NCBI GenBank assembly: GCA_965649825.1
Contig: OZ287701.1
Location: forward strand, 1,043,101 to 1,107,100
Length of the DNA: 64,000 nt
Reading direction: 5' to 3'
Source: Penicillus capitatus
Lineage: Eukaryota > Plantae > Chlorophyta
The stretch's first letter is position 1; every line of letters starts with the position of its first letter. The notes beneath the pieces were generated by a model. The model was given only the letters and a program-made list of their open reading frames with translations, ran no database searches and had not been told where the DNA came from. Positions 16,434-48,785 of this stretch are shown one piece after another. The translations under genes were made by a program, and so were the position numbers.

Positions 16434-19400
16434 TCATTCTTTCGTCACAAGGTTCTCCAACAAGCCCGGAAACTTCTCTTCAAAACCTTTCTTCAAATAC
16501 TCAAGTTGCTTGTCGAGAGCTTTCCCTTCCCAGCTCCCAATCTCATGCGATGATAATGCATGCAACACGAAGGGAACTTTCTTATCTTTTGTAGGAAGAG
16601 CCAGTGTGAACGAATTTTGAACAAAGATGAGCAAGAGGTTGCTCTTTAAGGCAGAGATACTTGATTTATGAATCCAATCAAGTCTTGATTCGCTTGGTGT
16701 TGTTTCTGGAGTTTGCTGACTGGAAAAGAGTTCGCTGCCACGCAGTTTCTGAATCATCGGAATATGATCGCCCACGAGGGTAAGAGCCGTCTTAACGACT
16801 CCCCTGAGAGCCTTCAACGCATTCGAATGCACATCGCTGTGTTTTTCGATGGATCCTCTATCGAGCATTGGCATAAATTTACCGACAAGATGCGCAGCTG
16901 CCTCCAGGGCCTGAAACGCTGCCGAACACACATCGCGGTGTTCGTCGATGCACCCTCTTTCGAGCATCGGCATAAATTCATCCACAAGTTGCGGTGCTGC
17001 CTCGATGACCAAGCCGAGGGTCTCTATTGCTGTCAGACGCACGAAAAAATCTTCGTCGCTTTGAACTTTCTCGATAATCGGCAAGAGGATATTCGAGAGG
17101 TGTGGCGTTGCCCCGATGACCTTGCCGACGACCTCGGATGTGGTCGAACGCACGAAATATACTTCGTCGGTACACCCTCCATAAAAAAGCATAAGCAATT
17201 TGCCTGCGAGGTCTGGCGCCGCGTTCACGACATCGGATACAGCCTCTATTGCTTTTTGACGCACGAAGAAGTTTTTGTCGGTGCATCCTGCCTCCAACAA
17301 CGAGAATAGTTTGCTCAGGATGTCCGATGAGTCAGCGACGACACTTCCAATCGCCGTGACCGCTGCATGACGCACGTGCCAGTCTGCGTCGTCGCACCCT
17401 TCAGCCAACGTCAGCAAAGCCTCGCCGGCGTGTTGAGGGGCCGCCGCGACGACACTTCCGATCGCCGTCACAGTTGCTTTACGCACGGCCGAGTCTTTGT
17501 CGCCACACAACTTAGACAACGTCGGCAGAGACCCGCCGGCGTGTTGAGGGGCCGCCGCGAAGACACGTTCAATCGCCGTCACGGCTGATATGCGCACGTC
17601 CGAGTTTCGGTCGCCGCACAATATAGACAACGTCGGCAGAGACCCGCTGGCGTGTTGAGGGGCCGCCGCGACGACACTTCCAATTGCCGTCACAGCTGAT
17701 ATGCGCACGTCCGAGTTTCGGTCGCCGCACAACATAGACAACATCGGCAGAGACCCGCCGGCGTGTTGAGGGGCCGCCGCGACGACACTTCCGATCGCCG
17801 TCACAGTTGCTTTACGCACGGCCGAGTCTTTGTCGCCACACAACTTAGCCAGCGTCGGCAGGACCTCGCCAGCTTGTTGAGGCGCCGCTTCGACAACACT
17901 TTCGATCGCCGTCACAGTTGCTTTACGCACGTCCGAGTCTTTGTCGCCATACAACTTAGCTAGCTTCAGCAGAGCATCGCTGGCGTGTCGAGGCGCCGCC
18001 GCAACGGCTCTTTCAATAGCCGTCATCGCTGCTTGACTTACGTACGGGCTTTCGCCCAAGTACAACATAGCCAACGTCGGCAAAGCCACGCCGGCGTGTT
18101 TAGGCGACGCCGCGACAACACTTCCGATCGCCGTCGCCGCTGATATGCGAACGTCCGAGTTTCCGTCGTTGCACAATATAGACAACGTCGACAGAGACCA
18201 GCCGGCGTGTTGAGGTGCCGCCGCGACGACACTTCCGATCGCCGTCGCCGCTGATATGCGAACGTCCGAGTTTCCGTCGTCGCGCAACTTAGACAACGTC
18301 GGCAGGACCTCGCTGGCCTGTAGAGGTGCCGCCGCGACGACAATTCCGATCGCCGTCGCCGCTGATATGCGAACGTCCGACTTTCTGTCGCCGCACAACA
18401 TAGACAACGTCGGCAGGACCTCGCTGGCGTGTTGAGGCGCCGCCGCAACGACACTTCCAATGGCCGTCACCGCTGTATGACGCACGTGCCAGTCTGCGTC
18501 ACGGCACCCTTTAACCAGCGTCGGCAGGACCTCGCCGGCGTATTTAGGCGACGCCGCAGCGACACTTCCAATCGCTGTCATCGATGCTTGACCCACAAAC
18601 CATTCCTTGTCGCCACACCATTTAGCCAGCGTCAGTAGAGCATCGCCAGCGTATTTAGGCGCAACCGCGGCCACACTGCCAATCGCTGTCACCGCTGCTT
18701 GACACACGTTTGAATCTCTGTCGCCGCACCCCTTAGCCAGCGTCGGAAGGACCTCCTCGGCATATTGAGGTGCCGCCGTAGCGACACTTCCAATCGCCGT
18801 TATCGCTCCTCGACGCACGTGCAAGTCTGTGTCGTCGCACCCTTCAGCCAGCGTCAGCAAAGCCTCGCCGGCGTGTTGAGGCGCCGCCGCGACGACACTT
18901 CCAATAGCTGTTGTTGCGTCTCGACGTACAAACCTGTTTTCGCCGCCGCACCCTTCAGCCAGCGTCAGTAGAGCATCTCTGGCGTGTTGAGGCGCCGCCG
19001 CAACGGCTCTTTCAATCGCCGTCATCGCTGCTTGTCGTTCATACGGGCTTTCGCTCAAGCACATCATAGCCAACGTCAGCAGAGCCTCGCCGGCGTGTTT
19101 AGACGACGCCACAGCGACACTGCCAATAGCCGTCGCCGCTGATATGCGAACGTCCGAGTTTCCGTCGCCGCACAACATAGACAATGTCGGCAGGACCTCG
19201 CTGGCGTGTTGAGGCGCCGCCGCAACGACACTTCCAATCGCCGTGGCCGCTGTATGACGCACGTGCCAGTCTGTATCGTCGCACCCTTCAGCCAGCGTCA
19301 GCAGAGCATCGCCGGCGTGTTGAGGCGCCGCCGCAACGACGTTTCCAAGTGCGATCATCGCTGCTTTACGCACGTCCGACTTTCCATCGCCGCACAACAT

Positions 19401-22400
19401 AGACAACGTCGGCAGGACCTCGCTGGCGTGTTGAGGCGCCGCCGCAACGACACTTCCAATCGCCGTGACCGCTGCATGACGCATGTGCCAGTCTGCGTCG
19501 TCGCACCCTTCAGCCAACGTCAGCAAAGCCTCGCCGGCGTGTTGAGGGGCCGCCGCGACGACACTTCCGATCGCCGTCACAGTTGCTTTACGCACGTCCG
19601 AGTCTTCGTCGCCACACAACTTAGCCAACGTCGGCAAAGCCTCGCCGGCGTGTTTAGGCGCCGCTGCGACAACACTTCCAATCGCCGTCAAAGCTACTTG
19701 ACGCATGTCTGGGCTTTTGTCGTTGAACCACTTAGTCGATCTTGGCGGAGTCCCGTAGGCGTGATGATATGCCGCCAGACCGATCCTTCCGATAGCCGTT
19801 GTCGCCGCTTGACGCACGTGCCAGTCTGTGTCATCCTGCTTTTCAGCCAGCGTGGGCAAAGCGTCGCAGGCGTGTTGAGGCGCCGCCGCAACGACGTTTC
19901 CAAGTGCGATCATCGCTGCTTTACGCACGTCCGACTTTCCATCGCCGCACAACGTAGACAACGTCGGCAGGACCTCGCTGGCGTGTTGAGGCGCCGCCGT
20001 AACGACACTTCCAATCGCCGTGACCGCTGCATGACGCATGTGCCAGTCTGCGTCGTCGCACCCTTCAGCCAACGTCAGCAAAGCCTCGCCGGCGTGTTGA
20101 GGGGCCGCCGCGACGACACTTCCGATCGCCGTCACAGTTGCTTTACGCACGTCCGAGTCTTCGTCGCCACACAACTTAGCCAACGTCGGCAAAGCCTCGC
20201 CGGCGTGTTTAGGCGCCGCTGCGACAACACTTCCAATCGCCGTCAAAGCTACTTGACGCATGTCTGGGCTTTTGTCGTTGAACCACTTAGCCAACTTCGG
20301 CAAAGCCTCGCTGGCGTGTTGAGGGGCCGCCGCGACGACACTTCCGATCGCCGTCACAGTTGCTTTACGCACGTCCGAGTCTTCGTCGCCACACAACTTA
20401 GCCAACGTCGGCAAAGCCTCGCCGGCGTGTTTAGGCGCCGCTGCGACAACACTTCCAATCGCCGTCAAAGCTACTTGACGCATGTCTGGGCTTTTGTCGT
20501 TGAACCACTTAGCCAACTTCGGCAAAGCCTCGCTGGCGTGTTGAGGGGCCGCCGCGACGACACTTCCGATCGCCGTCACAGTTGCTTTACGCACGTCCGA
20601 GTCTTCGTCGCCACACAACTTAGCCAACGTCGGCAAAGCCTCGCCGGCGTGTTTAGGCGCCGCTGCGACAACACTTCCAATCGCCGTCAAAGCTACTTGA
20701 CGCATGTCTGGGCTTTTGTCGTTGAACCACTTAGCCAACTTCGGCAAAGCCTCGCTGGCGTGTTGAGGGGCCGCCGCGACGACACTTCCGATCGCCGTCA
20801 CAGTTGCTTTACGCACGGCCGAGTCTTTGTCGCCACACAACTTAGCCAACGTCGGCAAAGCCTCGCCGGCGTGTTGAGGGGCCGATACGACGACACTTCC
20901 AATTGTCAATACCGCTGTTTTACGCACGTCCGAGTCTTCGTCGCCACACAACTTAGCCAACGTCGGCAAAGCCTCGCCGGCGTGTTTAGGCGCCGCCTCG
21001 ACGACACTTCCGAGTGCGGTCGTTGCCGCTTGACGCACGTACCGGTCTCCGTGGCCGCACATCTTAACCATCGTGGGCAGAACCTCGCTGGCTTGTTGGG
21101 GCAATTGTTCTGCGATGAAACCTGACCTTTCTATGCTCTGCTTTTTAGTGCGCCGACCGTCCGGTTTTTCCACTTTTTGCAATACGAATTGAATTATCAT
21201 TTCACTTTGCTTCAGATGATGGTTTGTGAGCTGTAAGACATCTGCGATCTTCGCCATTTCTTCACGTGTTAAGTCATGCACAGAAGTCAGCGTCTTCTTT
21301 GCTTCTTCGATGGTGTTATTGAGAACTTGAGGTAATTCTTCCAAAATGTGAGGCAGTTGTTGTAACTCTTGGACAACGATTTTACGAATCGGAAGATCGT
21401 CTATAGTGCGCTCGAGCAGTTGACGGGCACTTTTTACGAGTTTGACAACTTCTCTGGCCTTCAAAAGTTCTTTCAAATCGTCCTCATCAGTTCCTTCCAG
21501 TGTTGCCTCGAGTACTCGCATCCTAAGGAAAAAGTGCTGTATCCCCAGAACTTCGATGGGTGCTTTGTCGACAAGCGAAAGCATCTCTTGCATTGCAGTC
21601 TTGCTTCTCCCTTGTGCTAAGGCGTGCATAGCGAAGGAAAGTGTCAGTGCGTGCTCTCGATTGTATTTTTCTTGTCGAATGAAGTCCATCACTCTCTCTT
21701 TGTCCGATCCTTTTGTTCTTAGGGTTTTTGCAATATATCTTGCGGCAAAGTATTGCTGAAACGATTCGTGAGGGAACTGATATTTTTGGCACTCTGACAC
21801 GGGCAAGAGGAGTCCGCTCTCTTTGAATGTTCGAGTTGCATTCTTTGACGTTGCATGGCTGTCGACATAGCTTTCGTGGATGAGAACTGCTTTATGGCGA
21901 AGCGATTCAAAGGCGATTCTTTCCAGAGTCTGAAAGAGTTCCGCTTTCTGAATGTTTTCTCTGGTTGGCTTTCCTTCAAACTTTTTCCAGACAAAGTTCG
22001 TTATGTCGTTGTATATCTGGAACATGCTCGCTCTCTTTCTTCGTTCTTCCGTTGTGGTTCCGTGCTTTTTCGACAAGGAACAGAGAACGCTTGCCGTCGC
22101 TGGAATGTGCGCCACCTCCCATAAAGCATCAGAGTCTTCGATGAAGCGGATAAGCCTCGGAGCCTCGTCTCCGGACAACTCGTTCTTTATATAATCTCGC
22201 AATTGTTGGTCGTCGAATCCGAGACACTCCACTTGAATGTCGACGCGTTTTTCCACTCCTCTCGTGTTGTACGGACGAAAAAGAAACAGCACTTTGCAGG
22301 AGCGCTCCCAAATGGTGGATAAGAGGTCTATCGCATGGTCACTCGCCTCATCCAATCCATCAACCATGACCAGTGTTGAAGGGTCGTCGAGATCAAGTTC

Positions 22401-24486
22401 CACTCGAGCCACTAGGTCTTCGCAGTCGAAAGTGTGCTTGCTTTCGGGGAAGCATATCTGCGATACCGCTTCTTCGAGTCTTGTCCACTTCTGTCCGTTG
22501 TGCCATGCACTGTTGAGATGACTCGCAGCCACAGCGTAAACGGCGTTGAAATCCTGTGCCATTGCTCCCAATGCCCATCTGTGTGCAATGACTCTTGCGA
22601 CGCACGTCTTTCCCGAGCCGGGGTTTCCGTAGAGAAGCACTCTCTGAACTTCGCTTTCCGGGTCTACGGGTTTGAGAGCTCTTCGTTTGAACAGGTCGTC
22701 TAGAGCAATAGGGTTCTTGACTCCTGTCTTCTCCTCGCGGTGTTCCTTCGCTCGGTTCCCTCCGCGGTTTGAAGATTCTCCCTTCTTTTCTTCCACTCCT
22801 TGGACAGCTCCTTCTGATCCACGTCTCGATTCAGTTTCCCGTACTTCCACGGTTTCGCCAGAAAGGACGACGTGGTGCTTCATGTCCTTGACATGTAGGG
22901 GAGATCCTTCTTCGGTCAAAGAAGTCACCTGCAGGAACAAGACGATCTTATCGACTTGGGTGCGCTTCTCGTTGTAGTACCGTCGCAAAATCATTGTGCA
23001 AGTATCTCTGCCTCAACTCTTCTTGATGTGCATTCATGACAGCAAGTGGAATGTACCCCACGTCTCTGCCAATCCGAGTCAACAATTCTTCGTGTTCCGG
23101 CACGATCCCCTGTAACCTCGCAACTCGAAGCTTGTCTTCTATGCTGTTTCCGTCCAACCATTCCATGAGCGCGTCTCTAGTGGACCCCTCGCAAGATTGA
23201 TGTAATGCTTCGAGTGCTTCCTTGGTCGTTTCGTTGCCTTGGCCAGTATAGCGGTGCACGTCGTATATGACATCAAAGAGTGCCATCAAGATGTCGTCAT
23301 CGTCGATCCATCCTTCACTGACGGCTTGCTGCGTTGCCAGATCCGACAACATGATCGTTGCTTCTCTGCGAGTGCTCTCCGATGATCCTTCGATTGCTAG
23401 CATGCCCAACTCGTCAATGATTCCAAATCTCAGCGCCTTTAACTCTTCGCCATTTTCTATCTTTCGTTGATTCTCTATTGCGCTACTGTGCGCAGACTCG
23501 AAGGCAGCAAGGTTAATTTCGTCCTTCGTTGCTTTCAGCCTTGCCGCCATCAGATCCCATAGCGAGTCGAACCAAGGTCTCTTCGACATTTTCGACATTT
23601 CGACAAAAGAGACCTGATTTCTTTCGCTGGAATCCTCAGGGGTCGTCGGATCGATGTCGCCTCTTGCCCGATTTCTAAGAGGATGAAAAACACGCACGAG
23701 TCCACGAACGACATATTGTTTTGTTTGTGAAACTATTCGTGGAGTAGTGTCGCCTTTAAGGCGTTTGACTGCTTGACGAAGAACTCGGAAATGCATGTCC
23801 ACAGAGTACAACTCGCAGGAGAGTTTCATGGTTCTCTCTTTCTCTGCAATGGTTCTACTCAACGCTTGCTTCTCTTCTTTGCGAATCTCGTTTTGATTAA
23901 CGGTATTGAGCAGAAAAAACGTTTGTTGAAGTGTGACAAAGGTCCCTCTGTGCTCCGAGAAGTTCTCTCTGTTAAGGTTCGGTGTCGCAGATAGACTTCC
24001 CAAAAGCTTCTTTGCTACGACTATCAGCTGCTTAGCGCCACCGTACACAGACGGATTGGTGTGCACAAGTGCCCTGTGGAGGGCGGCGGCGAAGTTCGGT
24101 TTCAGGAATTCCTCTTCGGATATGGAGGAACAAAGGTCGTGAATCAGATTTTGTATAATGGCTTTCTCGTTTTCGGAACTTGGGGCGATGTCGGCCAGTT
24201 CTGCGTACTCGAGGACAGCCTGCGGCACGAGACAATCTTCCCTTCGTTCGTGATACTTGCGCAACCATCCCAGGATGACTGCGCGTTCGTCTTCATCCGT
24301 GACCGCGTTGCACGCTGCAACCAACGACTCGGTGCTGTCGATGCTGTATCTCCTCACGACAGCACGCAGAAGGATTCGATTATAACGTTCTTCAGTCTTC
24401 ACATCTTGGGTTGTGAGCTGACCACCAGTTTCCGACGCGGATGGCCGAACGCCACTGGGTCCTTCGTCAGGAGCTCGGGCTTGCAT
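16434..24486 (-). CDS. NLR-like STAND protein: helical N-terminal domain, NACHT, 34 HEAT-type repeats plus capping repeats (about 2666 aa, one coding intron)
   Basis: Exon 24486-22981, 52-nt GT-AG intron 22980-22929, exon 22928-16434. Walker A LLYGNPGSGKT, Walker B LVMVDGLDE, ECLGF, HIPATASVLC, winged-helix YQFPHESFQQYFAARY, then D.DVR.AA..AIG repeats. Confidence 0.92.
17278..21051 (-). repeat. Array of 34 x 111-bp HEAT-coding units, including exact 222-bp higher-order repeats
   Basis: Units counted from the translation. The same sequence CCGATCGCCGTCACAGTTGC recurs at 20122, 20344, 20566 and 20788 (period 222). Confidence 0.95.
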
Positions 24487-24999
24487 GTTTGCTTGCGTTC
24501 TACAAGACAAAACGTCTTCGCTTGTCGTTCAGCGAAACGGACAAATTCACTTACCGTCGTAAACAGTTCGCAACAAAGTTCGCAGTAGAGAAAGATGCGC
24601 TCGACGTTGTCGTTGACGTTAGAACCAAGTGAATAGATTGATTTGACCGACGCATCTGCCAGAAGAACAGATCCCATCCACAGATGCGGTATCGAGGGGG
24701 ACAGAACTTGTTATTACTGCCGAACGTCCTTGTCTGTGACTGCAACGTTTCTGCAGAAAATCTCCGAAGACGTCACAGAGAGACAGACATCTCAGCACAC
24801 GAGCGTGCTTAGTGCTTAGTAGGCTGAACTTAAGTTAGCATAGTCAAGCAGCAGCCGACTGTATTTCATCAACACTGCCACGATCATTTAGAGTCGTGCG
24901 AAAGGTAATGATCGGCACAGCATACCAGTCAAGGCGATTAAGGCAATGAAGAATCATTGCAGTTGAGAGATAGGGGACGGGAAGGAAAAATCAATGCTC

Positions 25000-27900
25000 C
25001 AAACCGTGATTATCCGAGATCCTTCAGTATGCTAATCTCACACCGTCAACCAGGACCTTCATCTAGGATCCTCGCCGGCATCGACCCGCGTATTCACTCA
25101 GTGTTCTGGTTCTCGATATCTTCGAACTCTTCGTCAGCTGCAGAGTGGGTCTTCCGAAGTCCAATGAATCCGGCGTGCCGAAGATGGAATCCAATCCAAC
25201 AGCATCCTGCCGCGCCTGCGACAGACGGGCTCCAGTCCAAGGCACACAGCAATTCAGTGAAGCAGACTCCGAATCCAAGCAGCATCTCTGCTGATCGAGC
25301 AAGACATCTTCACTTCTCTTCCGTCTTCAATCCTCTGTACAGGCACATTGTTCCGAATAGGTCAGTGCTGCGTCGTGCTGCGCATACAGGAATCGTGAAG
25401 CAGTTTGATGAGAAGACGACGACCCTTCGCCTCCACGACGACCTCGCGTCCTCCTTCAGCTCCTCGGCGGGAGCATCATTCGAATAATGGGCGAATGTGG
25501 AAGAAGTATCGTATGGCTTCCGTATCTGCGAATCCTCGGTCACAGATGAAAGCCGTCGTCAATCTCAGGTGGCCTTTTGCTAGTCTACGAGCTCTCCATG
25601 TCGGCAGGGTGCCGTTATGAAGGCCAGAGACGTCGATAGATTCTTCTCGTCCTTCGAACGAATCACCACCCGGCCACTGAAGTTCACTCCTTTGGACGCA
25701 TTTGTGCGGTCGATGCACGCGATCCCGCTTTCTGCTGTGCACTTAGTCATTGCAGAGATGTGTGGAGATTCGAGCGACACGGAGAGATCTGCAAGGCGCA
25801 CGTGATGTGCAAGACAGGGCACTGCAGCATTATCGCACTGCTGTTCTTGTTCGGACGTTTTAAGATTCTGTCGAGGAAGTCTCTGACAGAATCTCCGATT
25901 GCCTAGACAGAAGAGCAATCTGATGTCTCACTGTCTTCGGAAAAACCGCCAAGTCGCTCTCCGTAAGTCAAACCATCACTGTTCCGTCGACGTTTTCTGT
26001 CTCTAGAGAAACAGCGTCTGTCCCAATGTCCTGTGATCTGTCTTCGCTGGCAGACTAGAGTGGCGACAGTGGTGGCGATGTGGGATGTGCAGAAATGGGC
26101 TCACATATACGATGTTGTTCGTTACGGTAAGACAGAAATGGTCTTGGGAATTCCTTCTGGCGATGTCTTTTGTCTCTATCTCGCTGTAAACACCCGCGAA
26201 GGTTGATGGAAGCCACACACAAACCGCCGCCGCAGGTTCCGGCCGAGTTCTAGGTTACGTTAACACCACGCAACCTTATATGACGACAGGCACGATTTGG
26301 GGGCACTGTAGAAAGACAACGAGATTCCAGCAAGTACACTCAGACTCTCTGGCTGTCTTCGAGGTAGATACTGTCCAGTGAACTCTGTCAGTAAACGTCA
26401 TGTCCACAAGAACAGTTTCTCCAACGAGCGGCACGTCTATCGAGATCTTGATCTCATTCGGATCTGTTCACACAATCCACGTCTGCTATTCTTCAATGCA
26501 AGTAAGAGGCCACCTCCCTTTCGCTGGCGGCGATCCTCGATGTGCACCAGGTAGCCATCGCTTCGCCTTCTCATGTCCAGGCACTCACGAACGAGAGGAT
26601 CGTCGTCCTGTTTCGATCTTCCAGACTGAGTGCTCGGTTGTGCTTCAGCTCCCAACACTTGATCTGAAAAGTCCAGAAGAATGCTGCAAGAGACGCGATA
26701 GTATGGCACGTACAAGAATGGATTAAGACAACTCGCGTTCGGAGCTGCTATGGACAGCACCACCGACAAGAACCGTGCGTGTTGTCTGCATAGCGGAAAC
26801 AAAATTCCAAGGTCTCCTGGATATCGTGCAACAGCGGCTTTCGATTCCTCCACCGTTCCTGAAGGACACCGCGCCTCCAATGGGCGCGATGGTACGTTGA
26901 AAGCAGATGCTACAATTCCATCCGGCGGACAGAACTCTTTTGAAGGACATGGCACCGCCGGTACTCGATGCCAAATTCTCGGCTAAACTGATTCCAGAAG
27001 AGTCGAGAACCCGCAGGCTACCTGTCATACAGCAGATGTATGTTGTACGATGTCAGCATACACAACAGACACATCTCACCACATTGAAGACAGGCGATCG
27101 CGCCTGCCGTCATGAGAGCGATGTTGGATCAAAAATGGACAATGTTTGGAGAGATCTCGGATGTCTCAAAGTGGCTCCCTTTTTCGAGTGCCAGCAACCA
27201 CTAATGCGAGAACGATTGATTTGGAAGAGGATATTCTCTATGGTCACACGTGCTCTTCGAAACGCCCCTGCTCCGCCGATGTTCTCTCTACATTTGTCAA
27301 CAAATTGACTGTCGCTGAAACCACGAGGCTCTCTTCCGCCGAAATGCACCACTCGTTCGCGCTTGGTCGTAACGCAGGGAACCACTGTTGAGCTTCACTC
27401 TCTGGCTGGTCGAGAGTATGCCCCTCCCTTTTCGCCAGCTCTGTTGTCCGTGAATCGGCAATCATTCAAGGTCACTCCTCCGATGTTGTAGAGAGCACCT
27501 CCGTCTCCATCAGCGCTGTTGTTTGCAAAGAGGCAATGTTCGAACAAGCAATCGATCACTTGGATTGCGCCTACCCTCTCCGTGGCCTTGTTGTTTACCG
27601 TACTGCAGTTCATGAAGACCGCCCTGTTGTAGGCATAAAAAGACTCTCGCCCTGTTGTTCGCAAGGTGACAGTTGCTGAAAGTGACGTCTTCCTTCACTT
27701 TTCCTGCTCCGTTCTCGGCCGTCGATCGCGTTACTCTCCAGCTGACAATCGCCGAGATTAGTGAGCCCCTTCACGAAAATGCCTCCTTCTTCGTGGTCTG
27801 CGCGATTCTCAGCAACGCAGCAGTATCTGAAGGTCACGTTCCCTTCCACTATGACAACTCGATCCCATTCGGCGGGGTTCTTCGTGATGCTGCCGTCTAC

Positions 27901-28640: not shown

Positions 28641-29299
28641 GCTCAAACTCCTTCCAACGCTCAGGTCGCTGCAAAAGTGAGATCTATAAGTCCATCTCCA
28701 CGAGGTGCTTGAATGGCAAAACTGTTCAGAAATGACATGGCCCATTTTTCTTCCTTGTCACGGATAGAAGGATATTGAAAATTCTTTCTACGTTTTCATC
28801 TGCAAGAAGACTGGGAGTGATGCGCTATCTCCGACACTCCCAGTCCATGCAATGTACAGTTTGATCTTCTTCGTTCTAACGCATTTCTAGCATTTCCATC
28901 CAGGATATTTTTCCACGACTCCATGCCCTTCTGTTTGTTATTTTATGCAAGGAAAAGAACGCCGCTTATTCACATAGATTCTAAAAATCCCAAAGATCTG
29001 TGAAAGAATCATGAACTTCTTTTAGAGATCAGCCTCAAAGACACACATGGTCGCTACCACGGCAAATAGATTCCACGATATCAAACTTCGTCGAAACACT
29101 CGTGAGGTTGTAACGTCGAACACGGTGAACAGCTTGATACAAGAAGAAAAAGCGGAATGTCCTCTCTCTGCAAAGAACAGCAGCAGTCTGCGGATGAGAA
29201 CCATTCATAAGAGCTCGCCAATCAGCAAGACTGCCATCTCTAGTCTGCAAAAAGACATGGCCATTGATCGCATCGGCAAAAAGGTAAGCATATCCACTC

Positions 29300-39730: not shown

Positions 39731-41515
39731 AACCGTTTTCCTCCCATATGCTCAGTCATCGTCATCTTACCGACACCACGCATACGCGTTACACTTAAAT
39801 CTGCGCACCATGCGACTTCGTGGTTCTTAGCGACGGGGCCGTCGTTCGGGGCACTGTCTTTGGCGTTGGATAGCGCGTCTATGCTGTGAATGTCCCATCA
39901 GATGCGATGGGATTCGAGTGAGATTTATGAGGATGGCTGTGGCAGAGCGAGAATCACAGTTTAGTCAAGTGACTGTGAGATAACATAATGATGAGTCAAT
40001 ACACAGAACGTAGTGTAACGTCACATCATTGTACACAAGGTGCTTCGCGGATTCGCCGTCGTTTCACGCGTCGCGTCGTCGCCACAGTAAAGCACTGAGT
40101 TCTCATTTCCCAAGTGCGTAACAGCAACGTTTCCCCTTTTCTCTTTGAATCTGCAAGAACCCTTTCGCCAAAAGTTTCCTTTACGTTCAAACATAGGCAG
40201 AGGAGGTTCATCTTGAAAAATTGCCACTCGCCCGTCTCTGACCTGGTATTCTACCGTCTGCATTCGATATGCTCTGAGACACCAAGCATCTCAACCCCAT
40301 TAAGGTCTATGTCAACCGTAATCATTATCCTCGGCAAGTCTTCCAAGGAGTCAGTCGTTTTGCATTCGGCCGTAGGAAGGAGCTCCGTTATTTTTGGTTC
40401 CTTGAAATGGAGATGGAATGATTCCACATCAGTTTGTTTTTAGGCTGTCTATCGGAAAGACCGAGCGGACTTGTTTCAGTAAGGATCTTCAAGAGGGGAT
40501 AGGACAGCGAAAATTCTGAATCGCGATTCTTCCTCCTTTCTTCGGCATCTCTAGCTAGCAGTTATTTCATTGGCACGCATTTCCAGCGATTGGCAACCTT
40601 GGCGAAATGCAGCCATCGCATAAGCATCTTATATGAAACAACTCATTGACACCTGCATTCAGTCCGGCCTAGCAAGATTTTCTGTTTAGCCGAAGGTAAC
40701 ATTTTGTTGACGCGGCGTTAGTCTGGTAACTTTGCTAAATGTTTTGGAGTACATTGCCGTGCTTGTTTTGCGTGTTTTTTCTTTTCACTTACCCAAGTCA
40801 GCGTTTGGAATATCCACTGATGCTCTATGTTCTGTCGTTGCCAACGTACTGTACGTTACGACATCATCTGCGCAGATGTGTGTCTGGCCTTTTTCAAGTA
40901 CGAGTAAAAAGCGAAGTCTTTTTCTTGTTTTGGACAAATCTGACGTTATTGACAAGAGGATAGCAGTCATTTCAGATTTGCTGCAAACGCGTCATCACCA
41001 TCGACCGACAAAGGACACAAAGATTCTTTCTCTAAACAAGAATTATTTCTCGTAATAACACTTTCCCTTCGCGATATGACACGAATGTGGCAACCGTTCA
41101 ATTGCTTCGTCCGCAGCACTGTAAAATGTCGAGAATCTTGCCAATTTGTGAAACATTCCTCAACGGCAAAGAACTCTCCTCTTACAGCTCTAGCCCGTTT
41201 TTTAGCCACTTTCATCGATACCCATACATACTTGAGTGACATGGGTTGTACTTTAATGCACTTAATAAAGCGCTTAAATCACATATCCACCAAATGAAAG
41301 CACACACTAGACGAGCCAGAACATCTGGTTATCATATGTGGAACATAAGACGCCCAAAGACAAGTAAATCTTCTTCAACATACCGGAACATTAAGGAAAG
41401 TCGTTTTCTCCACCATCGAAACACTTGTGACGGAAAATGGGCAAAAAACATATAAGTGGTGACGTGTCTCGATTGCTTGAGTTCTGTGAACGTTTATTCA
41501 GAAAGTCTCTTTCAT

Positions 41516-44500
41516 TCATTCTTTCGTCACAAGGTTCTCCAACAAGCCCGGAAACTTCTCTTCAAAACCTTTCTTCAAATACTCAAGTTGCTTGTCGAGA
41601 GCTTCTCCTTCCCAGCTCCCAATCTCATGCGATGATAATGCATGCAACACGAAGGGAACTTTCTTATCTTTTGTAGAAAGAGCCAGTGTGAACGAATTTT
41701 GAACAAAGATGAGCAAGAGGTTGCTCTTTAAGGCAGAGATACTTGATTTATGAATCCAATCAAGTCTTGATTCGCTCGGTGTTGTTTCTGGAGTTTGCTG
41801 ACTGGAAAAATGTTCGCTGCCACGCAGTTTCTGAATCATCGGATTATGATCGTCCACGAGGGTAAGAGCCGTCTTAACGACTCTCCTGATAGCCTTCAAC
41901 GCATTCGAACGCACATCGCTGTGTTTTCCGATGGATCCTCTATCGAGCATTGGCATAAATTTGCCGACAAGATGCGCCGCTGCCTCCAGGGCCTGAAACG
42001 CTGCCGAACACACATCGCGGTGTTCGTCGATGCACCCTCTCTCGAGCATCGGCATAAATTTATCCACAAGTTTCGGCGCTGCCTCGATGACCAAGCCGAG
42101 GGTCTCTATTACTGTCAGACGCACGAAAAAATCTTCGTCGCTTTGAACTTTCTCGATAATCGGCAAGAGGATATTCGAGAGGTGTGGCGTTGCCCCGATG
42201 ACCTTGCCGACGACCTCGGATGTGGTCGAACGCACGAAATATACTTCGTCGGTACACCCTCCATAAAAAAGCATAAGCAATTTGCCTGCGAGGTTTGGCG
42301 CCGCGTTCACGACATCGGATACAGCCTCTATTGCATTTTGACGCACGAAGAAGTTTTTGTCGGCGCATCCCGCCTCCAACAACGAGAATAGTTTGCTCAG
42401 GATGTCCGATGAGTCAGCGACGACACTTCCAATTGCCATCATCATCGCTGCTTTACGCACGTCCGAGTCTTTGTCGCCACACAACTTAGCTAGCGTCAGC
42501 AGAGCATCGCCGGCGTGTTGAGGCGCCGCTGTGACGACACTTTCGATCGCCGTCACAGTTGCTTTACGCACGTCCGAGTCTTTGTCGCCACACAACTTAG
42601 CTAGCGTCAGCAGAGCATCGCCGGCGTGTTGAGGCGCCGCTGTGACGACACTTTCGATCGCCGTCACAGTTGCTTTACGCACGTCCGAGTCTTTGTCGCC
42701 ACACAACTTAGCTAGCGTCAGCAGAGCATCGCCGGCGTGTTGAGGCGCCGCTGTGACGACACTTTCGATCGCCGTCACAGTTGCTTTACGCACGTCCGAG
42801 TATTTGTCGCCACACAACTTAGCTAGCGTCAGCAGAGCATCGCCGGCGTGTTGAGGCGCCGCCGCAACGGCTCTTTGAATAGCCGTCATCGCTGCTTGAC
42901 TTACGTACGGGCTTTCGCCCAAGTACAACATAGCCAACGTCGGCAAAGCCACGCCGGCGTGTTGAGGCGACGCCGCGACGACACTTCCGATCTCCGTGAC
43001 CGCTGCACGACGCACGTGCCAGTCTGTGTCGTTGCACAATATAGACAACGTCGACAGAGACCAGCCGGCGTGTTGAGGTGCCGCCGCGACGACACTTCCG
43101 ATCGCCGTCGCCGCTGATATGCGAACGTCCGAGTTTCCGTCGTCGCGCAACTTAGACAACGTCGGCAGAACCTCGCCGGCGTGTTGAGGGGCCGCCGCGA
43201 CGACACTTCCGATCGCCGCCACCGCTGCTTTACGCACGGCCGACTTTATGTCGTCGCTCAACTTAGACAACGTCGGCAAAGCCACGCCGGCGTGTTGAGG
43301 CGACGCCGCAACGACACTTCCAATTGCCGTGACCGCTGCACGACGCACGTGCCAGTCTGTGTCACGGCACCCTTTAACCAGCGTCGGCAGGACCTCGCTG
43401 GCGTATTTAGGCGGCGCCGCAGCGATACTTCCAATGGCCGTGACCGCTGCATGACGCATGTGCCAGTCTGCGTTGTCGCACCATTTAGCCAGCGTCGGCA
43501 GAGCCTCGCCGGCGTGTTGAGGCGCCGCCGCGACGACACTTCCAATAGCTGTTGTTGCGTCTCGACGTACAAACATGTTTTCGCCGCCGCACCCTTCAGC
43601 CAGCGTCAGTAGAGCATCTCTGGCGTGTTGAGGCGCCGCCGCAACGGCTCTTTCAATCGCCGTCATCGCTGCTTGTCGTACATACGGGCTTTCGCTCAAG
43701 CACAACATAGACAACGTCAGCAGAGCCTCGCCGGCGTGTTGAGGTGCCGCCGCGACGACACCTCCGATCGCCGTCGCCGCTGATATGCGAACGTCCGAGT
43801 TTCCGTCGCCGCACAACATAGACAACGTCGGCAGGACCTCGCTCGCGTGTTGAGGCGCCGCCGCGACGACACTTCCAATGGCCGTGACAGCTGCATGACG
43901 CATGTGCCAGTCTGCGTCGTCGCACCTTTCAGCCAGCGTCAGCAGAGCCTCGCCGGCGTGTTTAGACGACGTCACTGCGACACTTCCGATCGCCGTCACC
44001 GCTGATATGCGAACGTCCGAGTTTCCGTCGCCGCACAACATAGACAACGTCGGCAGGACCTCGCTCGCGTGTTGAGGCGCCGCCGCGACGACACTTCCAA
44101 TGGCCGTGACAGCTGCATGACGCATGTGCCAGTCTGCGTCGTCGCACCCTTCAGCCAGCGTCAGCAGAGCCTCGCCGGCGTGTTTAGACGACGCCACTGC
44201 GACACTTCCGATCGCCGTCACCGCTGATATGCGAACGTCCGAGTTTCCGTCGCCGCACAACATAGACAACGTCGGCAGGACCTCGCTCGCGTGTTGAGGC
44301 GCCGCCGCGACGACACTTTTAATCGCCGCGACCGCTGCATGACGCACGTTCCAGTCTGTGTCATCGTGCTTATCAGCCAACGTCAACAGAGCCTCGCCGG
44401 CGTGTTTAGACGACGCCACTGCGACACTTCCGATCGCCGTCACCGCTGCTTTACGCACGTCCGAGTCTTCGTCGCCACACAACTTAGCCAACGTCGGCAA

Positions 44501-47500
44501 AGCCTCGCTGGCGTGTTGAGGCGCCGCTGCGACAACACTTCCAATCGCCGTCAAAGCTACTTGACGCATGTCTGGGCTTTTGTCGCTGAACCACTTAGTC
44601 GATCTCGGCGGAGTCCCACAGGCGTGAAGATATGCCGCCAGACCGACCCTTCCGATAGCCGTTGTCGCTGCTTGACGCACGTGCCAGTCTGTGTCATCGC
44701 GCTTTTTAGCCAACGTCAACAAAGCCTCGCCGGCGTGTTGAGGCGCCGCCGCAACGACATTTCCAAGTGCGATCATCGCTGCTTTACGCGCGTCCTTGTT
44801 TCCGTCGCCACACATCTTAGCCAGCGTCGGCAGCGCCTCGCTGGCGTGTTGAGGGGACGATGCGACGACACTTCCAATTGCCATTACCGCTGTTTTACGC
44901 ACGTCCGAGTCTTGGTCGCCACACAACTTAGATAACGTCGGCAGAGACCAGCCGGCGTGTTGAGGGGCCGTTGCGACGACTCTCCCTATCACCGTCACCG
45001 CTGCTTTACGCACGTCCGACTTTCCGTCGCCGCACAACATAGACAACGTCGGCAGGACCTCGCTGGCGTGTTGAGGCGCCGCCGCAACGACACTTCCAAT
45101 CGCCGTGACCGCTGCATGACGCACGTTCCAGTCTGTGTCATCGTGCTTATCAGCCAACGTCAACAAAGCCTCGCCGGCGTGTTGAGGCGCCGCCGCAACG
45201 ACATTTCCAAGTGCGATCATCGCCGCTTGACGTGCGTCCTTGTTTCCGTCGCCGCACAACTTAGCCAGTGTCGTCAGCGTCTCGCCGGCGTGTTTAGGCG
45301 CCGCCTCGACGACATTTCCGAGTGCGGTCATTGCCGCTTGACGCACGTACCGGTCTCCGTGGCCGCACATCTTAACCATCGTGGGCAGAACCTCGCTGGC
45401 TTGTTTGGGCAATTGTTCTGCGATGAAACCTAACCTTTCTATGCACTGCTTTTTAGTGCGGCGACCGTCCGGTTTTTCCACTTTTTGCAATACGAATTGA
45501 ATTATCATTTCACTTTGCTTCAGATGATTGCTTGTGAGCTGTAAGACATCTGCGATCTTCGCCATTTCTTCACGTGTTAAGTCATGCACAGAAGTCAGCG
45601 TTTTCTTTGCTTCTTCGATGGTGTTGTTGAGAACTTGAGGTAATTCTTCCAAAATGTGAGGCAGTTGTTGTAACTCTTGGATAACGATTTTACGAATCGG
45701 AAGATCGTCTATAGTGCGCTCGAGCAGTTGACGAGCACTTTTTACGAGTTTGACCACTTCTCTGGCCTTCAAAAGTTCTTTCAAATCATCCTCATCAGTT
45801 CCTTCCAGTGTTGCCTCGAGTACTCGCATCCTAAGGAAAAAGTGCTGTATCCCCAGAACTTCGATGGGTGCTTCGTCGACAAGCGAAAGCATCTCTTGCA
45901 TTACAGTCTTGCTTCTCCCTTGTGCTAAGGAGTTCATAGCGAAGGAAAGTGTCAGTGCATGCTTTCGATTGTATTTTTCTTGTCGAATGAACTCCACCAC
46001 TCTTCCCTCGTCCGATCCTTTTGTTCTTAGGGTTTTTGCAATATATCTTGCGGCAAAGTATTGCTGAAACGATTCGTGAGGGAACTGATACTTTTGGCAC
46101 TCCGACACGGGCAAGAGGAGTCCGCTCTCTTTGAATGTTCGAGTTGCATTCTTTGACGTTGCATGGCTGTCGACATAGCTTTCGTGGATGAGAACTGCTT
46201 TATGGCGAAGCGATTCAAAGGCGATCTTTTCCAGAGTCTGAAAGAGTTCCGCTTTCTGAGTGTTTTCTCTGGTTGGCTTTCCTTCAAACTTTTCCCAGAC
46301 AAAGTTCGTTATGTCGTTGTATATCTGGAACATGCTCGCTCTCTTTCTTCGTTCTTCCGTTGTGCTTCCGTGCTTCTTCGACAAGGAACAGAGAACGCTT
46401 GCCGTCGCTGGAATGTGCGCCACCTCCCATAAGGCTTTTTTGGGTTTTTCGAGATACTGGATGAGCCTCTGAGCTTCGTATTCGGACAACTCGCTCTCTA
46501 TGTAGTCGCGCAATTGTCCGTCGTCGAATCCGAGGCACTCAACTTGAATGTCAACGAGTGTTTCCACGTCTCTCGTGTTGTACGGACGAGAAAGAAACAG
46601 CACCTTGCAGGATCGCTCCCATATGGTTGACAAGAGGTCGATCGCATGGTCATCTGTCTCTTCCAGTCCATCGAAAATGAGCAGTGTTGAAGGGTCGTCG
46701 AGATCGAGTTCCACTCGAGCGACTAGGTCTTCGTAGTCAGAAGTGTGCTTGCTTTCGGGGAAGCATATCTGCGATACAGCTTCTTCGAGTCTTGTCCACC
46801 TCTGTCCGTCGTGCCCTCCACTGTTGAGATGACTCGCCGGCACAACGTAAACGGCGTTGAAATCCTGTGCCATTTCTTCCATTGCCCATCTGTGTGCAAT
46901 GACTCTTGCGATGCACGTCTTTCCCGAGCCGGGGTTTCCGTAGAGAAGCACTCTCTGAACTTCGATTTCCGGGTCTCCGGGTTTGAGAGCTCTTCGTTTG
47001 AACAGGTCGTCTAGAGCAATACGGTTTCTGAATCTTGTCTTCTCCTCATAGTATTCCTTCGCTTGGTTCTCTCCGCGGTTTAAAGATACTCTTGATTCAG
47101 TCTCCCGTACTTCTACGATATCGTCAGGAATGACGACGTGGTGCCTCATGTCCTTGACATGTTTGAGAGATCCTTCTTCGGTCAAAGAAGTCACCTGCAT
47201 GAACAAGACGCTCTTATCGACTTGGGTGTGCTTCTCGCTGTGATACCGTCGCAAAATCGCTGTGCAAGTATCTCTGCCTCAACTCTTCTTGATGTGCATT
47301 CATGACAGCAAGTGGAATGTACCCCACGTCTCTGCCAATCTTAGTCAACAATTCTTCGTGTTCCGGCACGATCCCTTGCAAACTTCCAGCTCGAAGCTTG
47401 TCTTCTAGGCTGTTTCCGTCCAACCATTCCATGAGCGCGTCTCTAGTGGAGCCCTCGCAAGATTGATGTAACGCTTCGAGTGCTTCTCTGGTCGTTTCGT

Positions 47501-48785
47501 TGCCTTGGCCAGTATAGCGGTGCACGTCGTATATGACATCCAAGAGTGCCATCAAGATGTCGTCATCGTCGATCCATCCTTCGCCGACGGCTTGCTGCGT
47601 TGCCAGATCCGACAACATGATCGTTGCTTCTCTGCGAGTTCTCTCCGACGATCCTTCGATTGCGAGCATGCCCAACTCGTCAATGATTCCAAATCTCAGC
47701 GCCTTCAACTCTTCGCCGTTTTCTATCTTTTGTTGATTCGCTATTGTGCTACTGTACGCGGACTCGAAGGCAACAAGGTTAATTTCGTCCTTCGTTGCTT
47801 TCAGCCTTGCCGCCATCAGATCCCAAAGCGAGTCGAACCAAGGTCTCTTCGACATTTTCGACATTTCGACAACGGAGACCTGATTTCTTTCGCTTGAGTC
47901 CTCATGGACCGTCGGATCGATGTCGCCCCTTGCCCGATTTCTAAAAGAATGAAAAACGCGCACGAATCCACGTAATCCATCCAACACATGTTGTCTCGTC
48001 TGGGCATCTCGTGTACTAGTGTCTTCACATGCAACTTGTGAAGAAGCGTCTTCTTTAAGGCGTTCCACCTCGTGACGAAGAACTTGGAAATGCAAATCCA
48101 CAGAGTACAGCTTGCAGGAGAGTTTCATAGTTCTCTCTTTCTCTGCAATGGTTCTACTCAACGCTTGCTTCTCTTCTTTGCGGATCTTGTTTTGATTGAC
48201 GGCATTAAGCAGAAAAAGGGTTTGTTGAAGTGTGAGAAAGGTCCATTTGTGCTCCGAGAAGTTCTCTCTGTCAAGGTTCGGTGTCGCAGATAGACTTCCC
48301 AAAAGCTTCCTTGCCACGACCACCAGCTGCTTGGCGCCATCGTACACAGATGGATTAATGCACACAAGTGCCCTGTGAATGGCGGCGGCGAATTTAGGTT
48401 TTAGGAATTCTCCCTCGGATATACTGGAACAAAGGTCGCGGATCAATTTCTTCAGAATATTAGCCTCGCTTGTGGAGCGTGGGACGACGTTGGCCAGTTC
48501 CGCATACTCAAGGACGGCCTCCGGCGCGAGACAATCTTCGCTTCGTTCGTGATAGTTGCGCAGCCATCCGACGAGAACGGCGCGTTCGGCTTCGTCCGTG
48601 GTCGCGTTGTAAGCCGCAACAAGTGACTTTGTGCTGTCGATGTTGTGTTTCTTCACGACAGTACGCAGAAGGATTCGTCCGTAACGTTCTTCGGTCTCCA
48701 CGTTTCGTGATGTGAGCTCATTGCCAGATTCCGACGCAGATGGCCGAACGCCACTGGGTCCTTCGTCAGGAGCTCGGGCTTGCAT
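41516..48785 (-). CDS. NLR-like STAND protein paralog 2: helical N-domain, NACHT, 27 HEAT-type repeats plus caps (about 2405 aa)
   Basis: Exon 48785-47247, 52-nt GT-AG intron 47246-47195, exon 47194-41516. GNPGSGKT, LLIFDGLEE, FLSRPY, FPHESFQQYFAARY. Confidence 0.92.
42359..45358 (-). repeat. Array of 27 x 111-bp HEAT-coding units
   Basis: Units counted from the translation. Near-exact 111-bp triplication at about 42460-42840 and 222-bp repeats at about 43760-44300. Confidence 0.95.

What the first reader, a model, noticed from the sequence alone, without database searches (positions are those of the whole stretch)
16434..48785. Pair of NLR-like NACHT-HEAT receptors diversified by shuffling near-identical 111-bp repeat modules
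Seen: the two paralogs have very similar NACHT and C-terminal cap regions but 34 vs 27 core 37-aa HEAT units. The 259-aa array length difference is exactly 7 units. The same unit types (DSDVRKATV, SPDMRQVAL, DWHMRHAAV, NSDVRISAA, SPYVRQAAM) occur in different order, with fresh exact 111-bp and 222-bp duplications at different places in each gene. One oddball unit (AIGRIGLAAY..GTPPRSTKWF) is unit 12 in one gene and unit 7 in the other. Established: fungal NLRs such as Podospora HET-D/HET-E generate new specificities by unequal crossing-over among highly conserved WD40 repeats. Inference: this is an analogous HEAT-based variable receptor system in an apparent green alga, which I do not recognise as described.
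Basis: partly seen in the sequence, partly recalled or inferred. Interest (0 to 1): 0.88.

Follow-up and report, generated by a model that had tools for sequence, protein, structure and literature searches.

The report
Green-algal NACHT-HEAT receptor gene pair
Two neighbouring genes of an unidentified green alga encode giant NLR-like proteins whose long HEAT-repeat arrays gain, lose and replace whole 37-residue units much faster than the DNA around them changes, as in the variable-repeat immune-type receptors of fungi, but in a lineage where this had not been reported.

Summary
The core observation holds. Two intact minus-strand genes, A (16434-24486, 2666 aa) and B (41516-48785, 2405 aa), each have one 52-nt intron. 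Each encodes an unknown 500-aa helical N-domain, a NACHT module, a helical linker, 34 or 27 HEAT units in perfect 37-aa register, and a conserved cap.

Two points are overstated. The units are not generally near-identical: mean nucleotide identity is 74.5%, and only some recent copies are exact. The order is not shuffled: 17 unit pairs form a collinear backbone, with independent local duplications and losses.

The genes sit in a recent tandem segmental duplication whose flanks are 96-100% identical, so the arrays have changed much faster than their surroundings.

They belong to a family of at least 50-80 paralogues in related algal assemblies. Two close relatives carry 28 and 21 units, and their units cluster by array (concerted evolution). 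Three paralogues at 90% identity or more carry 2, 5 and 8 units.

Variability concentrates in the intra-repeat loop and the start of helix B. Evidence for positive selection is suggestive, not conclusive.

The closest relatives outside the family are bacterial NACHT-HEAT proteins. NLRs with internally conserved repeats, including one HEAT case, are known in fungi. I therefore rate this a new variant of a known kind. An immune function is inferred, not shown.

The parts
16434..24486 (-). Gene A: 2666-aa NACHT-HEAT protein. Exon 1 is 22981-24486, the intron 22929-22980, and exon 2 16434-22928 including the stop codon.
   Evidence: ORFs; GT..AG intron that restores the frame; no internal stop codon.
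22981..24486 (-). Gene A N-terminal domain (aa 1-502). All-alpha, in two helical halves joined by a disordered linker. No known family.
   Evidence: No hit in Pfam, PADLOC or NCBIfam. AF2 model pLDDT 78.9, pTM 0.76. Best PDB fold match has TM <= 0.27. 80 homologues, all upstream of the same family's NACHT ORFs, plus one partial STAND protein from a bacterial MAG.
21747..22649 (-). Gene A NACHT NOD module. Contains Walker A GNPGSGKT, Walker B DGLDE, and the winged-helix motif YQFPHESFQQYFAA.
   Evidence: Pfam NACHT aa 598-753, 34.5 bits against a cut-off of 26.7. Aligns to NLRP3 residues 209-536 with E 4e-10.
21087..21746 (-). Gene A helical linker after the NACHT module (about 220 aa).
   Evidence: Translation. 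93% aa identity to B with dS 0.065.
17334..21086 (-). Gene A HEAT array: 34 units of 111 nt (37 aa), the last one partial.
   Evidence: TRF; unit table; identity matrix; AF2 model of units 14-21 with pLDDT 92.8.
16434..17333 (-). Gene A constant C-terminal cap: about 5 degenerate HEAT repeats and a tail of about 110 aa ending FPGLLENLVTKE.
   Evidence: HEAT hits (protein 2). 95% aa identity to B with dS 0.04. The tail motif is conserved across the family. The tail has no Pfam hit.
41516..48785 (-). Gene B: 2405-aa paralogue. Exon 1 is 47247-48785, the intron 47195-47246, and exon 2 41516-47194.
46055..46960 (-). Gene B NACHT NOD module (Walker B DGLEE).
   Evidence: Translation. 87% aa identity to A.
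42416..45394 (-). Gene B HEAT array: 27 units of 111 nt.
41516..42415 (-). Gene B constant C-terminal cap.
   Evidence: TRF finds a 99-nt period at 41906-42085.
12733..31401 (.). Copy 1 of the tandem segmental duplication that carries gene A. It includes a 2.5-kb insertion at 25830-28372 that copy 2 lacks.
   Evidence: Self-BLAST; identity profile.
38007..53156 (.). Copy 2 of the segmental duplication, carrying gene B.
   Evidence: Flanks are 96-100% identical, while the NACHT + N-domain + promoter block is only 77-95% identical.

Best explanation
A and B are two recently duplicated members of a large, lineage-specific family of STAND NTPases in a green alga. The architecture is NLR-like: an unknown 500-aa helical N-domain, a NACHT module, a helical linker, a HEAT solenoid and a constant cap.

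**Shown**
- The HEAT arrays evolve by in-register duplication, deletion and replacement of whole 111-nt units or 2-5-unit blocks. Unequal crossing-over, replication slippage and gene conversion are all consistent with this pattern.
- Homogenisation occurs within an array and between the two arrays of one genome.
- This turnover is much faster than point substitution in the flanking DNA.
- A separate 5' block (promoter, N-domain, NACHT) has been exchanged with other paralogues.

**Inferred**
- The array is the sensor. Its variable residues lie at the end of helix A, in the intra-repeat loop and in the first turns of helix B. Together they would form one continuous ridge that binds a ligand, probably a pathogen-derived, symbiont-derived or non-self protein.
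- Binding would release NACHT-driven oligomerisation.
- The N-domain would be the output module.
- The NOD + HEAT module probably shares ancestry with bacterial NACHT-HEAT proteins. The direction of any transfer is unknown.
For: - **Architecture:**. The D[GAS]hDE Walker B signature (DGLDE in A, DGLEE in B) is read directly.
- **Open frame:** all 61 units stay in register across 3.0-3.8 kb with no stop codon.
- **Recent unit duplications:** exact copies at different places in each gene, on a collinear backbone.
- **Internal clock:** duplication flanks are 96-100% identical and array-adjacent coding dS is 0.04-0.065. Yet only 5 inter-gene unit pairs reach 97% identity, and unit counts are 34 vs 27.
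- **Family:** 53 NACHT hits and 80 N-domain hits at 40-88% identity in long contigs of related assemblies.
- **Relatives C and D:** they have 28 and 21 units. Nearest-neighbour units fall in the same array for 27/27 units of C and 17/20 of D, and within the A+B pool for all 59 A and B units.
- **Repeat number varies among close paralogues:** three loci at >= 90% identity carry 2, 5 and 8 units.
- **Mosaic history:** the N-domain of A is closer to C (88%) than to B (82%), whereas from NACHT to the C-terminus A is closest to B.
- **Position of variability:** entropy peaks at unit positions 7-16, 19, 20 and 22. The model places helix A at 33..9, the loop at 10-14 and helix B at 15-31. The best fold matches are the PP2A A subunit and CAND1, TM 0.73-0.77.
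- **Selection:** at positions chosen from C/D, A/B show pN/pS 1.87, or 2.77 for close pairs, against about 0.5 elsewhere. Tree-based counting gives omega 1.98, p 0.002.
- **Bacterial relatives:** NOD + linker is 27-34% identical over 430-520 aa to NACHT-HEAT proteins that lie in bacterial gene neighbourhoods.
Against: - No expression, ligand or phenotype data exist, so the immune or receptor role is by analogy only.
- The reciprocal selection test (C/D at positions chosen from A/B) gives omega 0.76. No single codon survives correction for multiple tests. Relaxed constraint on the loop therefore remains possible.
- The N-domain matches no known effector.
- Synonymous diversity among units is high (pS about 0.3). 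Homogenisation is therefore weaker than in fungal genes with >= 85% identical repeats.
- PADLOC has no matching NACHT model.
- Allelic and population variation could not be examined.
Confidence: 0.6

Rival explanations
1. The proteins are non-immune STAND or scaffold proteins. The HEAT solenoid is structural or binds an endogenous partner, and changes in unit number and loop sequence are nearly neutral by-products of tandem-repeat instability.
For: - Omega at variable positions is only 0.76 in arrays C and D, and no site passes correction for multiple tests.
- Unit order is largely conserved between A and B.
- No known effector or death domain is present.
Against: - The family has expanded to dozens of paralogues with extreme length variation, from 2 to 34 units.
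- Framework positions are under strong purifying selection (omega 0.07-0.5), while change concentrates on one structural ridge.
- Omega is 1.98 (p 0.002) in A/B.
- The frame is kept perfectly over 3.8 kb.
- The architecture is the one used for sensing across bacteria, fungi and animals.
Confidence: 0.2
2. The feature is an assembly artefact. Either the exact repeats are expansions created by the assembler, or A and B are two haplotypes of one locus wrongly placed in tandem.
For: - The flanks of the two copies are 96-100% identical.
- Exact 111-333-bp repeats are the kind of sequence assemblers mishandle.
- The sequencing technology behind the window is unknown.
Against: - Long in-register arrays of 28 and 21 units occur in another assembly.
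- Repeat-number variation occurs at three separate loci of a further assembly.
- All arrays are open and in frame.
- The longest near-exact stretch is about 0.8 kb, far below long-read length.
- The copies are separated by 6.6 kb of unique DNA containing a LINE.
- The 5' 3.8-kb block differs by 5-23%, far more than the flanks.
Confidence: 0.07
3. The arrays are diversified somatically, within one individual or between nuclei, as a regulated process that generates a repertoire. On this view the variation is not only germ-line evolution.
For: Only the repeat architecture and the speed of change relative to the flanks. This idea has been raised for brown-algal and Podospora receptors (PMC3341825, PMC13449251).
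Against: - No evidence for it is available here.
- The contig carries a single consistent sequence for each gene.
- No recombinase or cassette donor array lies nearby.
- The A/B backbone is collinear.
Confidence: 0.03

Closest known systems
Fungal NLRs with highly internally conserved repeats: Podospora anserina HNWD genes het-d, het-e and het-r, and related ANK, TPR and HEAT genes (Paoletti 2007, PMC1805685; Dyrka 2014, PMC4986451; PMC12222747; PMC13449251)
   Same: - Three-part STAND architecture with a NACHT module.
- A single-exon tandem array of solenoid repeats.
- Repeat number differs between close copies.
- Concerted evolution within and between paralogues.
- Variability concentrated at a few surface positions.
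- One Podospora NACHT gene of this kind has HEAT repeats.
   Different: - Green-algal host.
- 37-aa HEAT units (33 aa in Podospora), with up to 34 per gene.
- Lower internal identity: Psim 0.72-0.77 and mean unit aa identity about 0.6, so Dyrka's 85% criterion is met only locally.
- Unknown N-domain instead of HET, HeLo, PNP_UDP and similar domains.
- The NACHT module is closer to bacterial NACHT-HEAT proteins.
- No allorecognition phenotype is known.
Bacterial NACHT (bNACHT) and STAND antiphage proteins with C-terminal HEAT repeats (Kibby et al., bioRxiv 10.1101/2022.07.19.500537)
   Same: - Same order of NACHT followed by a HEAT array.
- The best matches outside the family (27-34% identity over NOD + linker) lie in bacterial gene neighbourhoods.
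- The HEAT units resemble prokaryotic HEAT repeats of the PBS-lyase type.
   Different: - Eukaryotic gene with a spliceosomal intron.
- Expanded to dozens of paralogues.
- Different N-domain: the bacterial examples seen here carry a phospholipase-like domain or ANK repeats.
- No PADLOC NACHT model matches.
Brown-algal NB-ARC-TPR and LRR-ROCO candidate receptors (Zambounis 2012, PMC3341825)
   Same: Algal STAND-type candidate receptors in which the repeat region is the fast-evolving part and repeats are exchanged among paralogues.
   Different: In brown algae each repeat is a separate exon and shuffling involves exons and splicing. Here the whole array is one exon. The NTPase is NACHT rather than NB-ARC, and the repeats are HEAT rather than TPR or LRR.
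Plant NB-ARC-LRR receptors, including those reported in some green algae (PMC7145615; Feng 2024, cited in PMC13315243)
   Same: Intracellular STAND receptors of the green lineage, clustered and duplicated in tandem.
   Different: A different NTPase clade (NACHT scores above NB-ARC), a different repeat type, and no TIR, CC or RPW8 domain.
Natural and designed HEAT-like repeat binders (alphaRep, based on PBS-lyase HEAT-like repeats; from my own knowledge, not checked here)
   Same: Near-constant framework residues, with a handful of variable positions that build a binding surface.
   Different: Here the variable positions centre on the intra-repeat loop and the helix B N-terminus, and the array is attached to a NACHT switch.

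Membership tests
NACHT-clade STAND NTPase (NLR-like) | Walker A P-loop GxxxxGK[ST] | tested here: met
   GNPGSGKT is present in both A and B.
NACHT-clade STAND NTPase (NLR-like) | Walker B with the NACHT signature D[GAS]hDE | tested here: met
   VMVDGLDEA in A and LIFDGLEET in B. The signature is as defined in bioRxiv 10.1101/2022.07.19.500537.
NACHT-clade STAND NTPase (NLR-like) | Profile match above the curated threshold, extending through the helical and winged-helix domains | tested here: met
   Pfam NACHT 34.5 bits against a cut-off of 26.7. A 317-aa alignment to NLRP3 residues 209-536, E 4e-10.
NACHT-clade STAND NTPase (NLR-like) | Three-part layout: N-terminal output domain, NOD module, C-terminal solenoid repeats | tested here: met
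   The role of the N-domain is unknown.
NACHT-clade STAND NTPase (NLR-like) | Ligand-triggered, nucleotide-dependent oligomerisation | not testable with these tools
   Requires biochemistry.
NLRs with highly internally conserved (HIC) repeats, Podospora type | High internal repeat conservation | tested here: inconclusive
   Psim(aa) is 0.72-0.77, which meets the >= 0.7 criterion of PMC13449251. Dyrka's criterion of >= 85% over 100 aa is met only locally, at A3-A9 and B24-B26.
NLRs with highly internally conserved (HIC) repeats, Podospora type | Repeat-number differences between close copies or alleles | tested here: met
   Unit counts of 34, 27, 28 and 21 in A, B, C and D. Counts of 2, 5 and 8 in three paralogues at >= 90% identity. 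Allelic variation was not testable.
NLRs with highly internally conserved (HIC) repeats, Podospora type | Concerted evolution of units within and between paralogues | tested here: met
   Nearest-neighbour analysis.
NLRs with highly internally conserved (HIC) repeats, Podospora type | Positive diversifying selection at surface positions | tested here: inconclusive
   Omega is 1.98 (p 0.002) in A/B at sites defined from C/D. The reciprocal test gives 0.76. No single site is robust.
NLRs with highly internally conserved (HIC) repeats, Podospora type | Homology to HET-D/E (HET N-domain, WD40 repeats) | tested here: not met
   No HET or WD40 hit. The resemblance is in process, not in family membership.
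Plant NB-ARC-LRR receptor | NB-ARC NTPase and LRR array | tested here: not met
   Neither NB-ARC nor LRR appears among the 25 best of 32 Pfam matches listed for A (7 further matches were not shown). Some family members carry weak precomputed NB-ARC hits alongside NACHT.
Bacterial NACHT-HEAT STAND proteins | Sequence relatedness of NOD + HEAT to proteins encoded in bacterial genomes | tested here: met
   P0346 is 33.6% identical over 429 aa and P0278 26.6% over 526 aa. Both have bacterial gene neighbours such as rpoC, sufBD, ftsH, yajC and nusB.
Bacterial NACHT-HEAT STAND proteins | Antiphage or antiviral activity | not testable with these tools
   PADLOC gives HEAT and generic AAA hits only.
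Brown-algal exon-shuffled receptors | One repeat per exon | tested here: not met
   Each array is one uninterrupted ORF of 3.0-3.8 kb.

The most novel reading that the evidence does not exclude
A green-algal lineage has built a large intracellular recognition repertoire of at least 50 genes. It is based not on the plant NB-ARC-LRR design but on a NACHT-HEAT module shared with bacteria, fused to a new 500-aa output domain. New specificities arise by rapid turnover of HEAT units and by swapping of 5' modules among paralogues. This would be an independent, HEAT-based origin of a hypervariable immune or non-self receptor system within Viridiplantae. A less likely extension is that the arrays also vary somatically.
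Probability: 0.35. Interest if true: 0.75.

Novelty: new variant of a known kind. Interest (0 to 1): 0.55.

Why it matters
Green algae are thought to have few intracellular immune receptors, and the discussion so far centres on NB-ARC-LRR genes (PMC13315243, PMC7145615).

A large family of NACHT-type genes with fast-changing HEAT arrays would show the evolutionary strategy known from fungal HET-D/E genes operating in the plant lineage. That strategy combines internally similar repeats, unit turnover and concerted evolution. Here it uses a different repeat and an unknown output domain.

It would also add a probable bacterium-eukaryote link for NACHT-HEAT proteins.

The pair in this window is a convenient natural experiment. 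Flanks that are 96-100% identical give an internal clock against which array turnover can be measured.

Practically, the family offers candidates for algal defence or partner recognition, for example against viruses, fungi or symbionts. It also offers a natural HEAT scaffold with defined variable positions.

Tried and rejected
- **Oddball junction as a frameshifted stretch: rejected.** A12-13 and B7-8 have the same length as normal units, and no alternative frame reproduces the normal sequence. Relative D has an ordinary sequence at the equivalent place (D9-10). It is local point divergence shared by A and B.
- **Identifying the N-domain: nothing found.** There were no significant matches in Pfam, PADLOC or NCBIfam (at E <= 1 Pfam lists only three chance-level matches, 12-13 bits), no PDB sequence match with a 74-sequence profile, and only generic helical-repeat fold matches with TM <= 0.27.
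- **Identifying the C-terminal tail:** no Pfam, PADLOC or NCBIfam hit.
- **Naming the organism: failed.** Cluster look-ups returned no names. Ribosomal protein uS8 of the related genome scores equally well against fungal and plant ribosomes in the PDB.
- **My error in the representative-library search.** I gave coordinates covering the post-NACHT linker plus units 1-13 instead of the NACHT module.
- **Alignment A2** of overlapping 8-unit windows came out staggered and was discarded. A3 was used instead.
- **Per-site selection tests** were not significant after correction.
- **No tRNA or Rfam feature** is present in the window.


Full report
**Gene models**

The window holds two long minus-strand reading frames, each split into two ORFs. 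In both, the upstream ORF ends in ...DFAT followed by GT. Fifty-two bases later an AG precedes GTG ACT TCT (VTS...), and removing these 52 nt joins the frames. Gene A is 16434-24486 (2666 aa) and gene B is 41516-48785 (2405 aa), with no internal stop codon.

Pfam finds a NACHT domain (aa 598-753, 34.5 bits, cut-off 26.7) and many HEAT matches (E 5e-36). It finds nothing in the first 500 residues.

The NOD region aligns to NLRP3 residues 209-536 (E 4e-10) through the winged-helix motif. It carries GNPGSGKT and the NACHT-type Walker B DGLDE in A and DGLEE in B. These are therefore NLR-like STAND proteins of the NACHT clade.

**The arrays**

TRF reports period-111 arrays at 17335-21102 and 42417-45405. 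Cutting the proteins every 37 residues from EVLPTMVKMC gives 34 and 27 units without a single frame slip.

The following exact or near-exact repeats exist:
- A4=A6=A8 and A5=A7, giving an exact 222-bp period.
- A9=A14, with A10/A15 and A11/A16 at 98-99%.
- B25=B26.
- B11-12 and B13-14 at 99.1%.

The units as a whole are not near-identical. Mean pairwise identity is 74.5% at nucleotide level and about 59% at amino-acid level, with Psim 0.72-0.73.

The order is not scrambled either. The best inter-gene matches form a collinear chain of 17 pairs: A1-B1, A12/13-B7/8, A14-B9, A19-B16, A20-B17, A24-B19, A26-B21, A28-B23, A29-B24 and others. The collinear score is 22.6, against 12.6 +/- 1.4 for shuffled order. 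The differences are local expansions, losses and replaced units. Some units are chimeras: B22 has the 5' end of A27 and the variable core and 3' end of B19.

**An internal clock**

Self-comparison shows that the two genes lie in a tandem segmental duplication, 12733-31401 against 38007-53156. Identity varies along the duplicated unit as follows:

| Region | Identity between copies |
|---|---|
| Non-coding flanks | 96-100% |
| Cap and post-NACHT linker | 96-98% |
| NACHT + N-domain + about 1.3 kb upstream | 77-95% |

Coding dS falls along the gene: 0.25 in the N-domain, 0.17 in NACHT, 0.065 in the linker and 0.04 in the cap.

Between linker and cap, which differ by 2-4%, the arrays differ by seven units. 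Only five unit pairs reach 97% identity or more. The array has therefore changed much faster than its surroundings.

The 5' block has a different history. The N-domain of A is 88% identical to a gene of another genome (C) but only 82% identical to B. This points to exchange of 5' modules among paralogues.

**The family**

The NACHT region finds 53 proteins, and the N-domain finds 80 proteins, at 40-88% identity. All are unnamed and come from long contigs of ENA metagenome assemblies. Every locus inspected has the same two-ORF layout. Most members have 2-12 units and end in the same FPGLLE tail.

Three paralogues that cluster at 90% identity or more sit at three loci of one assembly and carry 2, 5 and 8 units.

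The closest relatives are genes C (L008) and D (L009), on one contig of another assembly. They have 28 and 21 units in the same 37-aa register, and D has the same Kir-channel neighbour as A.

The nearest neighbour of each unit lies in its own array for 27/27 units of C and 17/20 of D. For all 59 units of A and B it lies within the A+B pool. This is concerted evolution, with exchange between the two arrays of one genome.

**Where the variation sits**

Entropy peaks at unit positions 7-16, 19, 20 and 22, plus 1, 2 and 37. An AlphaFold model of units A14-A21 (pLDDT 92.8) places helix A at positions 33 to 9, the intra-repeat loop at 10-14 and helix B at 15-31. It superposes best on the PP2A A subunit and CAND1 (TM 0.73-0.77).

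The variable residues therefore line the loop edge and the first turns of helix B. From my own knowledge, this ridge is the one PR65/A uses to bind its partners.

The selection tests gave the following results:
- **Pairwise, in-sample.** Nei-Gojobori counts give pN/pS of about 1.4 at the variable positions and about 0.5 elsewhere. That choice of sites is circular.
- **Pairwise, out-of-sample.** With sites chosen from C/D and tested in A/B, pN/pS is 1.87, or 2.77 for unit pairs at 90% identity or more.
- **Tree-based, A/B.** Counting on a tree gives omega 1.98 (p 0.002) at sites chosen from C/D.
- **Tree-based, reciprocal.** The test in C/D gives omega 0.76.
- **Per site.** No site is robust, while framework sites are strongly conserved.

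Diversifying selection is therefore suggested but not established.

**Other parts**

The N-domain is all-alpha, in two halves joined by a disordered linker (pLDDT 78.9). It has no structural or sequence relative in the PDB. Its only hit outside the family is a partial protein from a Cytophagales MAG, where it also precedes a STAND P-loop. It is therefore a STAND-associated module of unknown activity.

The odd junction is point divergence, not a frameshift.

**Origin and host**

The library search used the wrong query coordinates through my own error. It still showed that 71 of the 144 best HEAT-array representatives carry a related NACHT module.

Beyond the algal family, identity over NOD plus linker falls to 27-36%. 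Two of these proteins lie among typical bacterial genes. A third, at 36%, is from the same alga. This is far closer than animal NLRs, which reach 22%.

Several lines of evidence point to a flagellate green alga, but the species is unknown:
- The best named hits of a flanking 5'-nucleotidase are Trebouxia (59%) and land plants.
- The syntenic relative, about 80% identical in DNA, carries DUF3228 on the syntenic contig, CCDC61_N on that same contig, and LPA1_N (a photosystem II assembly factor) on another contig of the same assembly.

**Comparison with what is known**

Repeat arrays with high internal conservation, repeat-number polymorphism and concerted evolution are well described for fungal NLRs. 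Those include one Podospora NACHT-HEAT gene (PMC1805685, PMC4986451, PMC13449251).

HEAT is also listed among the C-terminal repeats of bacterial NACHT proteins. Brown algae shuffle repeat exons instead (PMC3341825).

Searches for NACHT together with green-algal terms found no description of such a family.

I therefore rate this a new variant of a known kind. The process is shown. The receptor role is inferred.

Noticed in passing
window 21986-25825 vs 46290-50131: Inside a duplication whose flanks are 96-100% identical, the block holding NACHT, the N-domain and about 1.3 kb upstream is only 77-95% identical. The N-domain of A is closer to gene C of another genome (88%) than to B (82%). This suggests a 5' module swap among paralogues by ectopic recombination.
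   Followed up: partly
P0263 (Cytophagales MAG, 2085-bp contig): This is the only hit to the N-domain outside the family, at 27% identity over 86% of the query. The domain is again followed by a STAND P-loop (AAA_16/NB-ARC-like) before the contig ends. Either the domain is shared with bacteria or the short contig is mis-binned.
   Followed up: partly
window 31494-37735 (+): A non-LTR retrotransposon lies between the two genes. It has an ORF with a CCHC-type zinc knuckle (32930-33574) and a 1143-aa ORF with RVT_1 (34304-37735). A LINE carrying Exo_endo_phos_2 and RVT_1 also lies downstream of relative C in L008.
   Followed up: partly
window 5139-10140 and 54789-59722: An older duplication, 86% identical, of a multi-exon gene. 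The gene encodes a beta-helix protein with Chlamydia-PMP-like repeats and a C-terminal transmembrane segment. The two copies bracket the NLR pair.
   Followed up: no
window 12733-13861 and 38007-39131; L003 10822-11009: A repeat element, 99% identical downstream of both genes, also occurs at 85.6% identity in the related genome. There it abuts the truncated HEAT array of another family member, so it may be a transposon that interrupts NLR genes.
   Followed up: no
window 25830-28372: A 2.5-kb insertion upstream of gene A that is absent from the copy upstream of gene B. Its content was not characterised.
   Followed up: no
window 110-12463 vs L004 (ERZ26696514 ctg303710): Synteny of about 80% DNA identity (5'-nucleotidase, PMP-like gene, Kir channel) with a related genome ends exactly where the repeat element and gene A begin. 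The NLR cluster may therefore be a presence/absence difference between the two genomes. Only 2.5 kb beyond the breakpoint could be seen.
   Followed up: partly
window 11110-12081 (-): An inward-rectifier-type potassium channel gene (IRK_C plus Ion_trans_2) lies in an apparent green alga. The same gene neighbours relative D.
   Followed up: no
window 19206-21125 (+) and 44291-44935 (+): Long antisense ORFs lie inside the arrays. They are most likely a by-product of the G+C-rich repeat, not genes.
   Followed up: no
window 5-101 and 423-1523: A 12-nt microsatellite (8 copies) lies next to a serine-rich low-complexity ORF.
   Followed up: no
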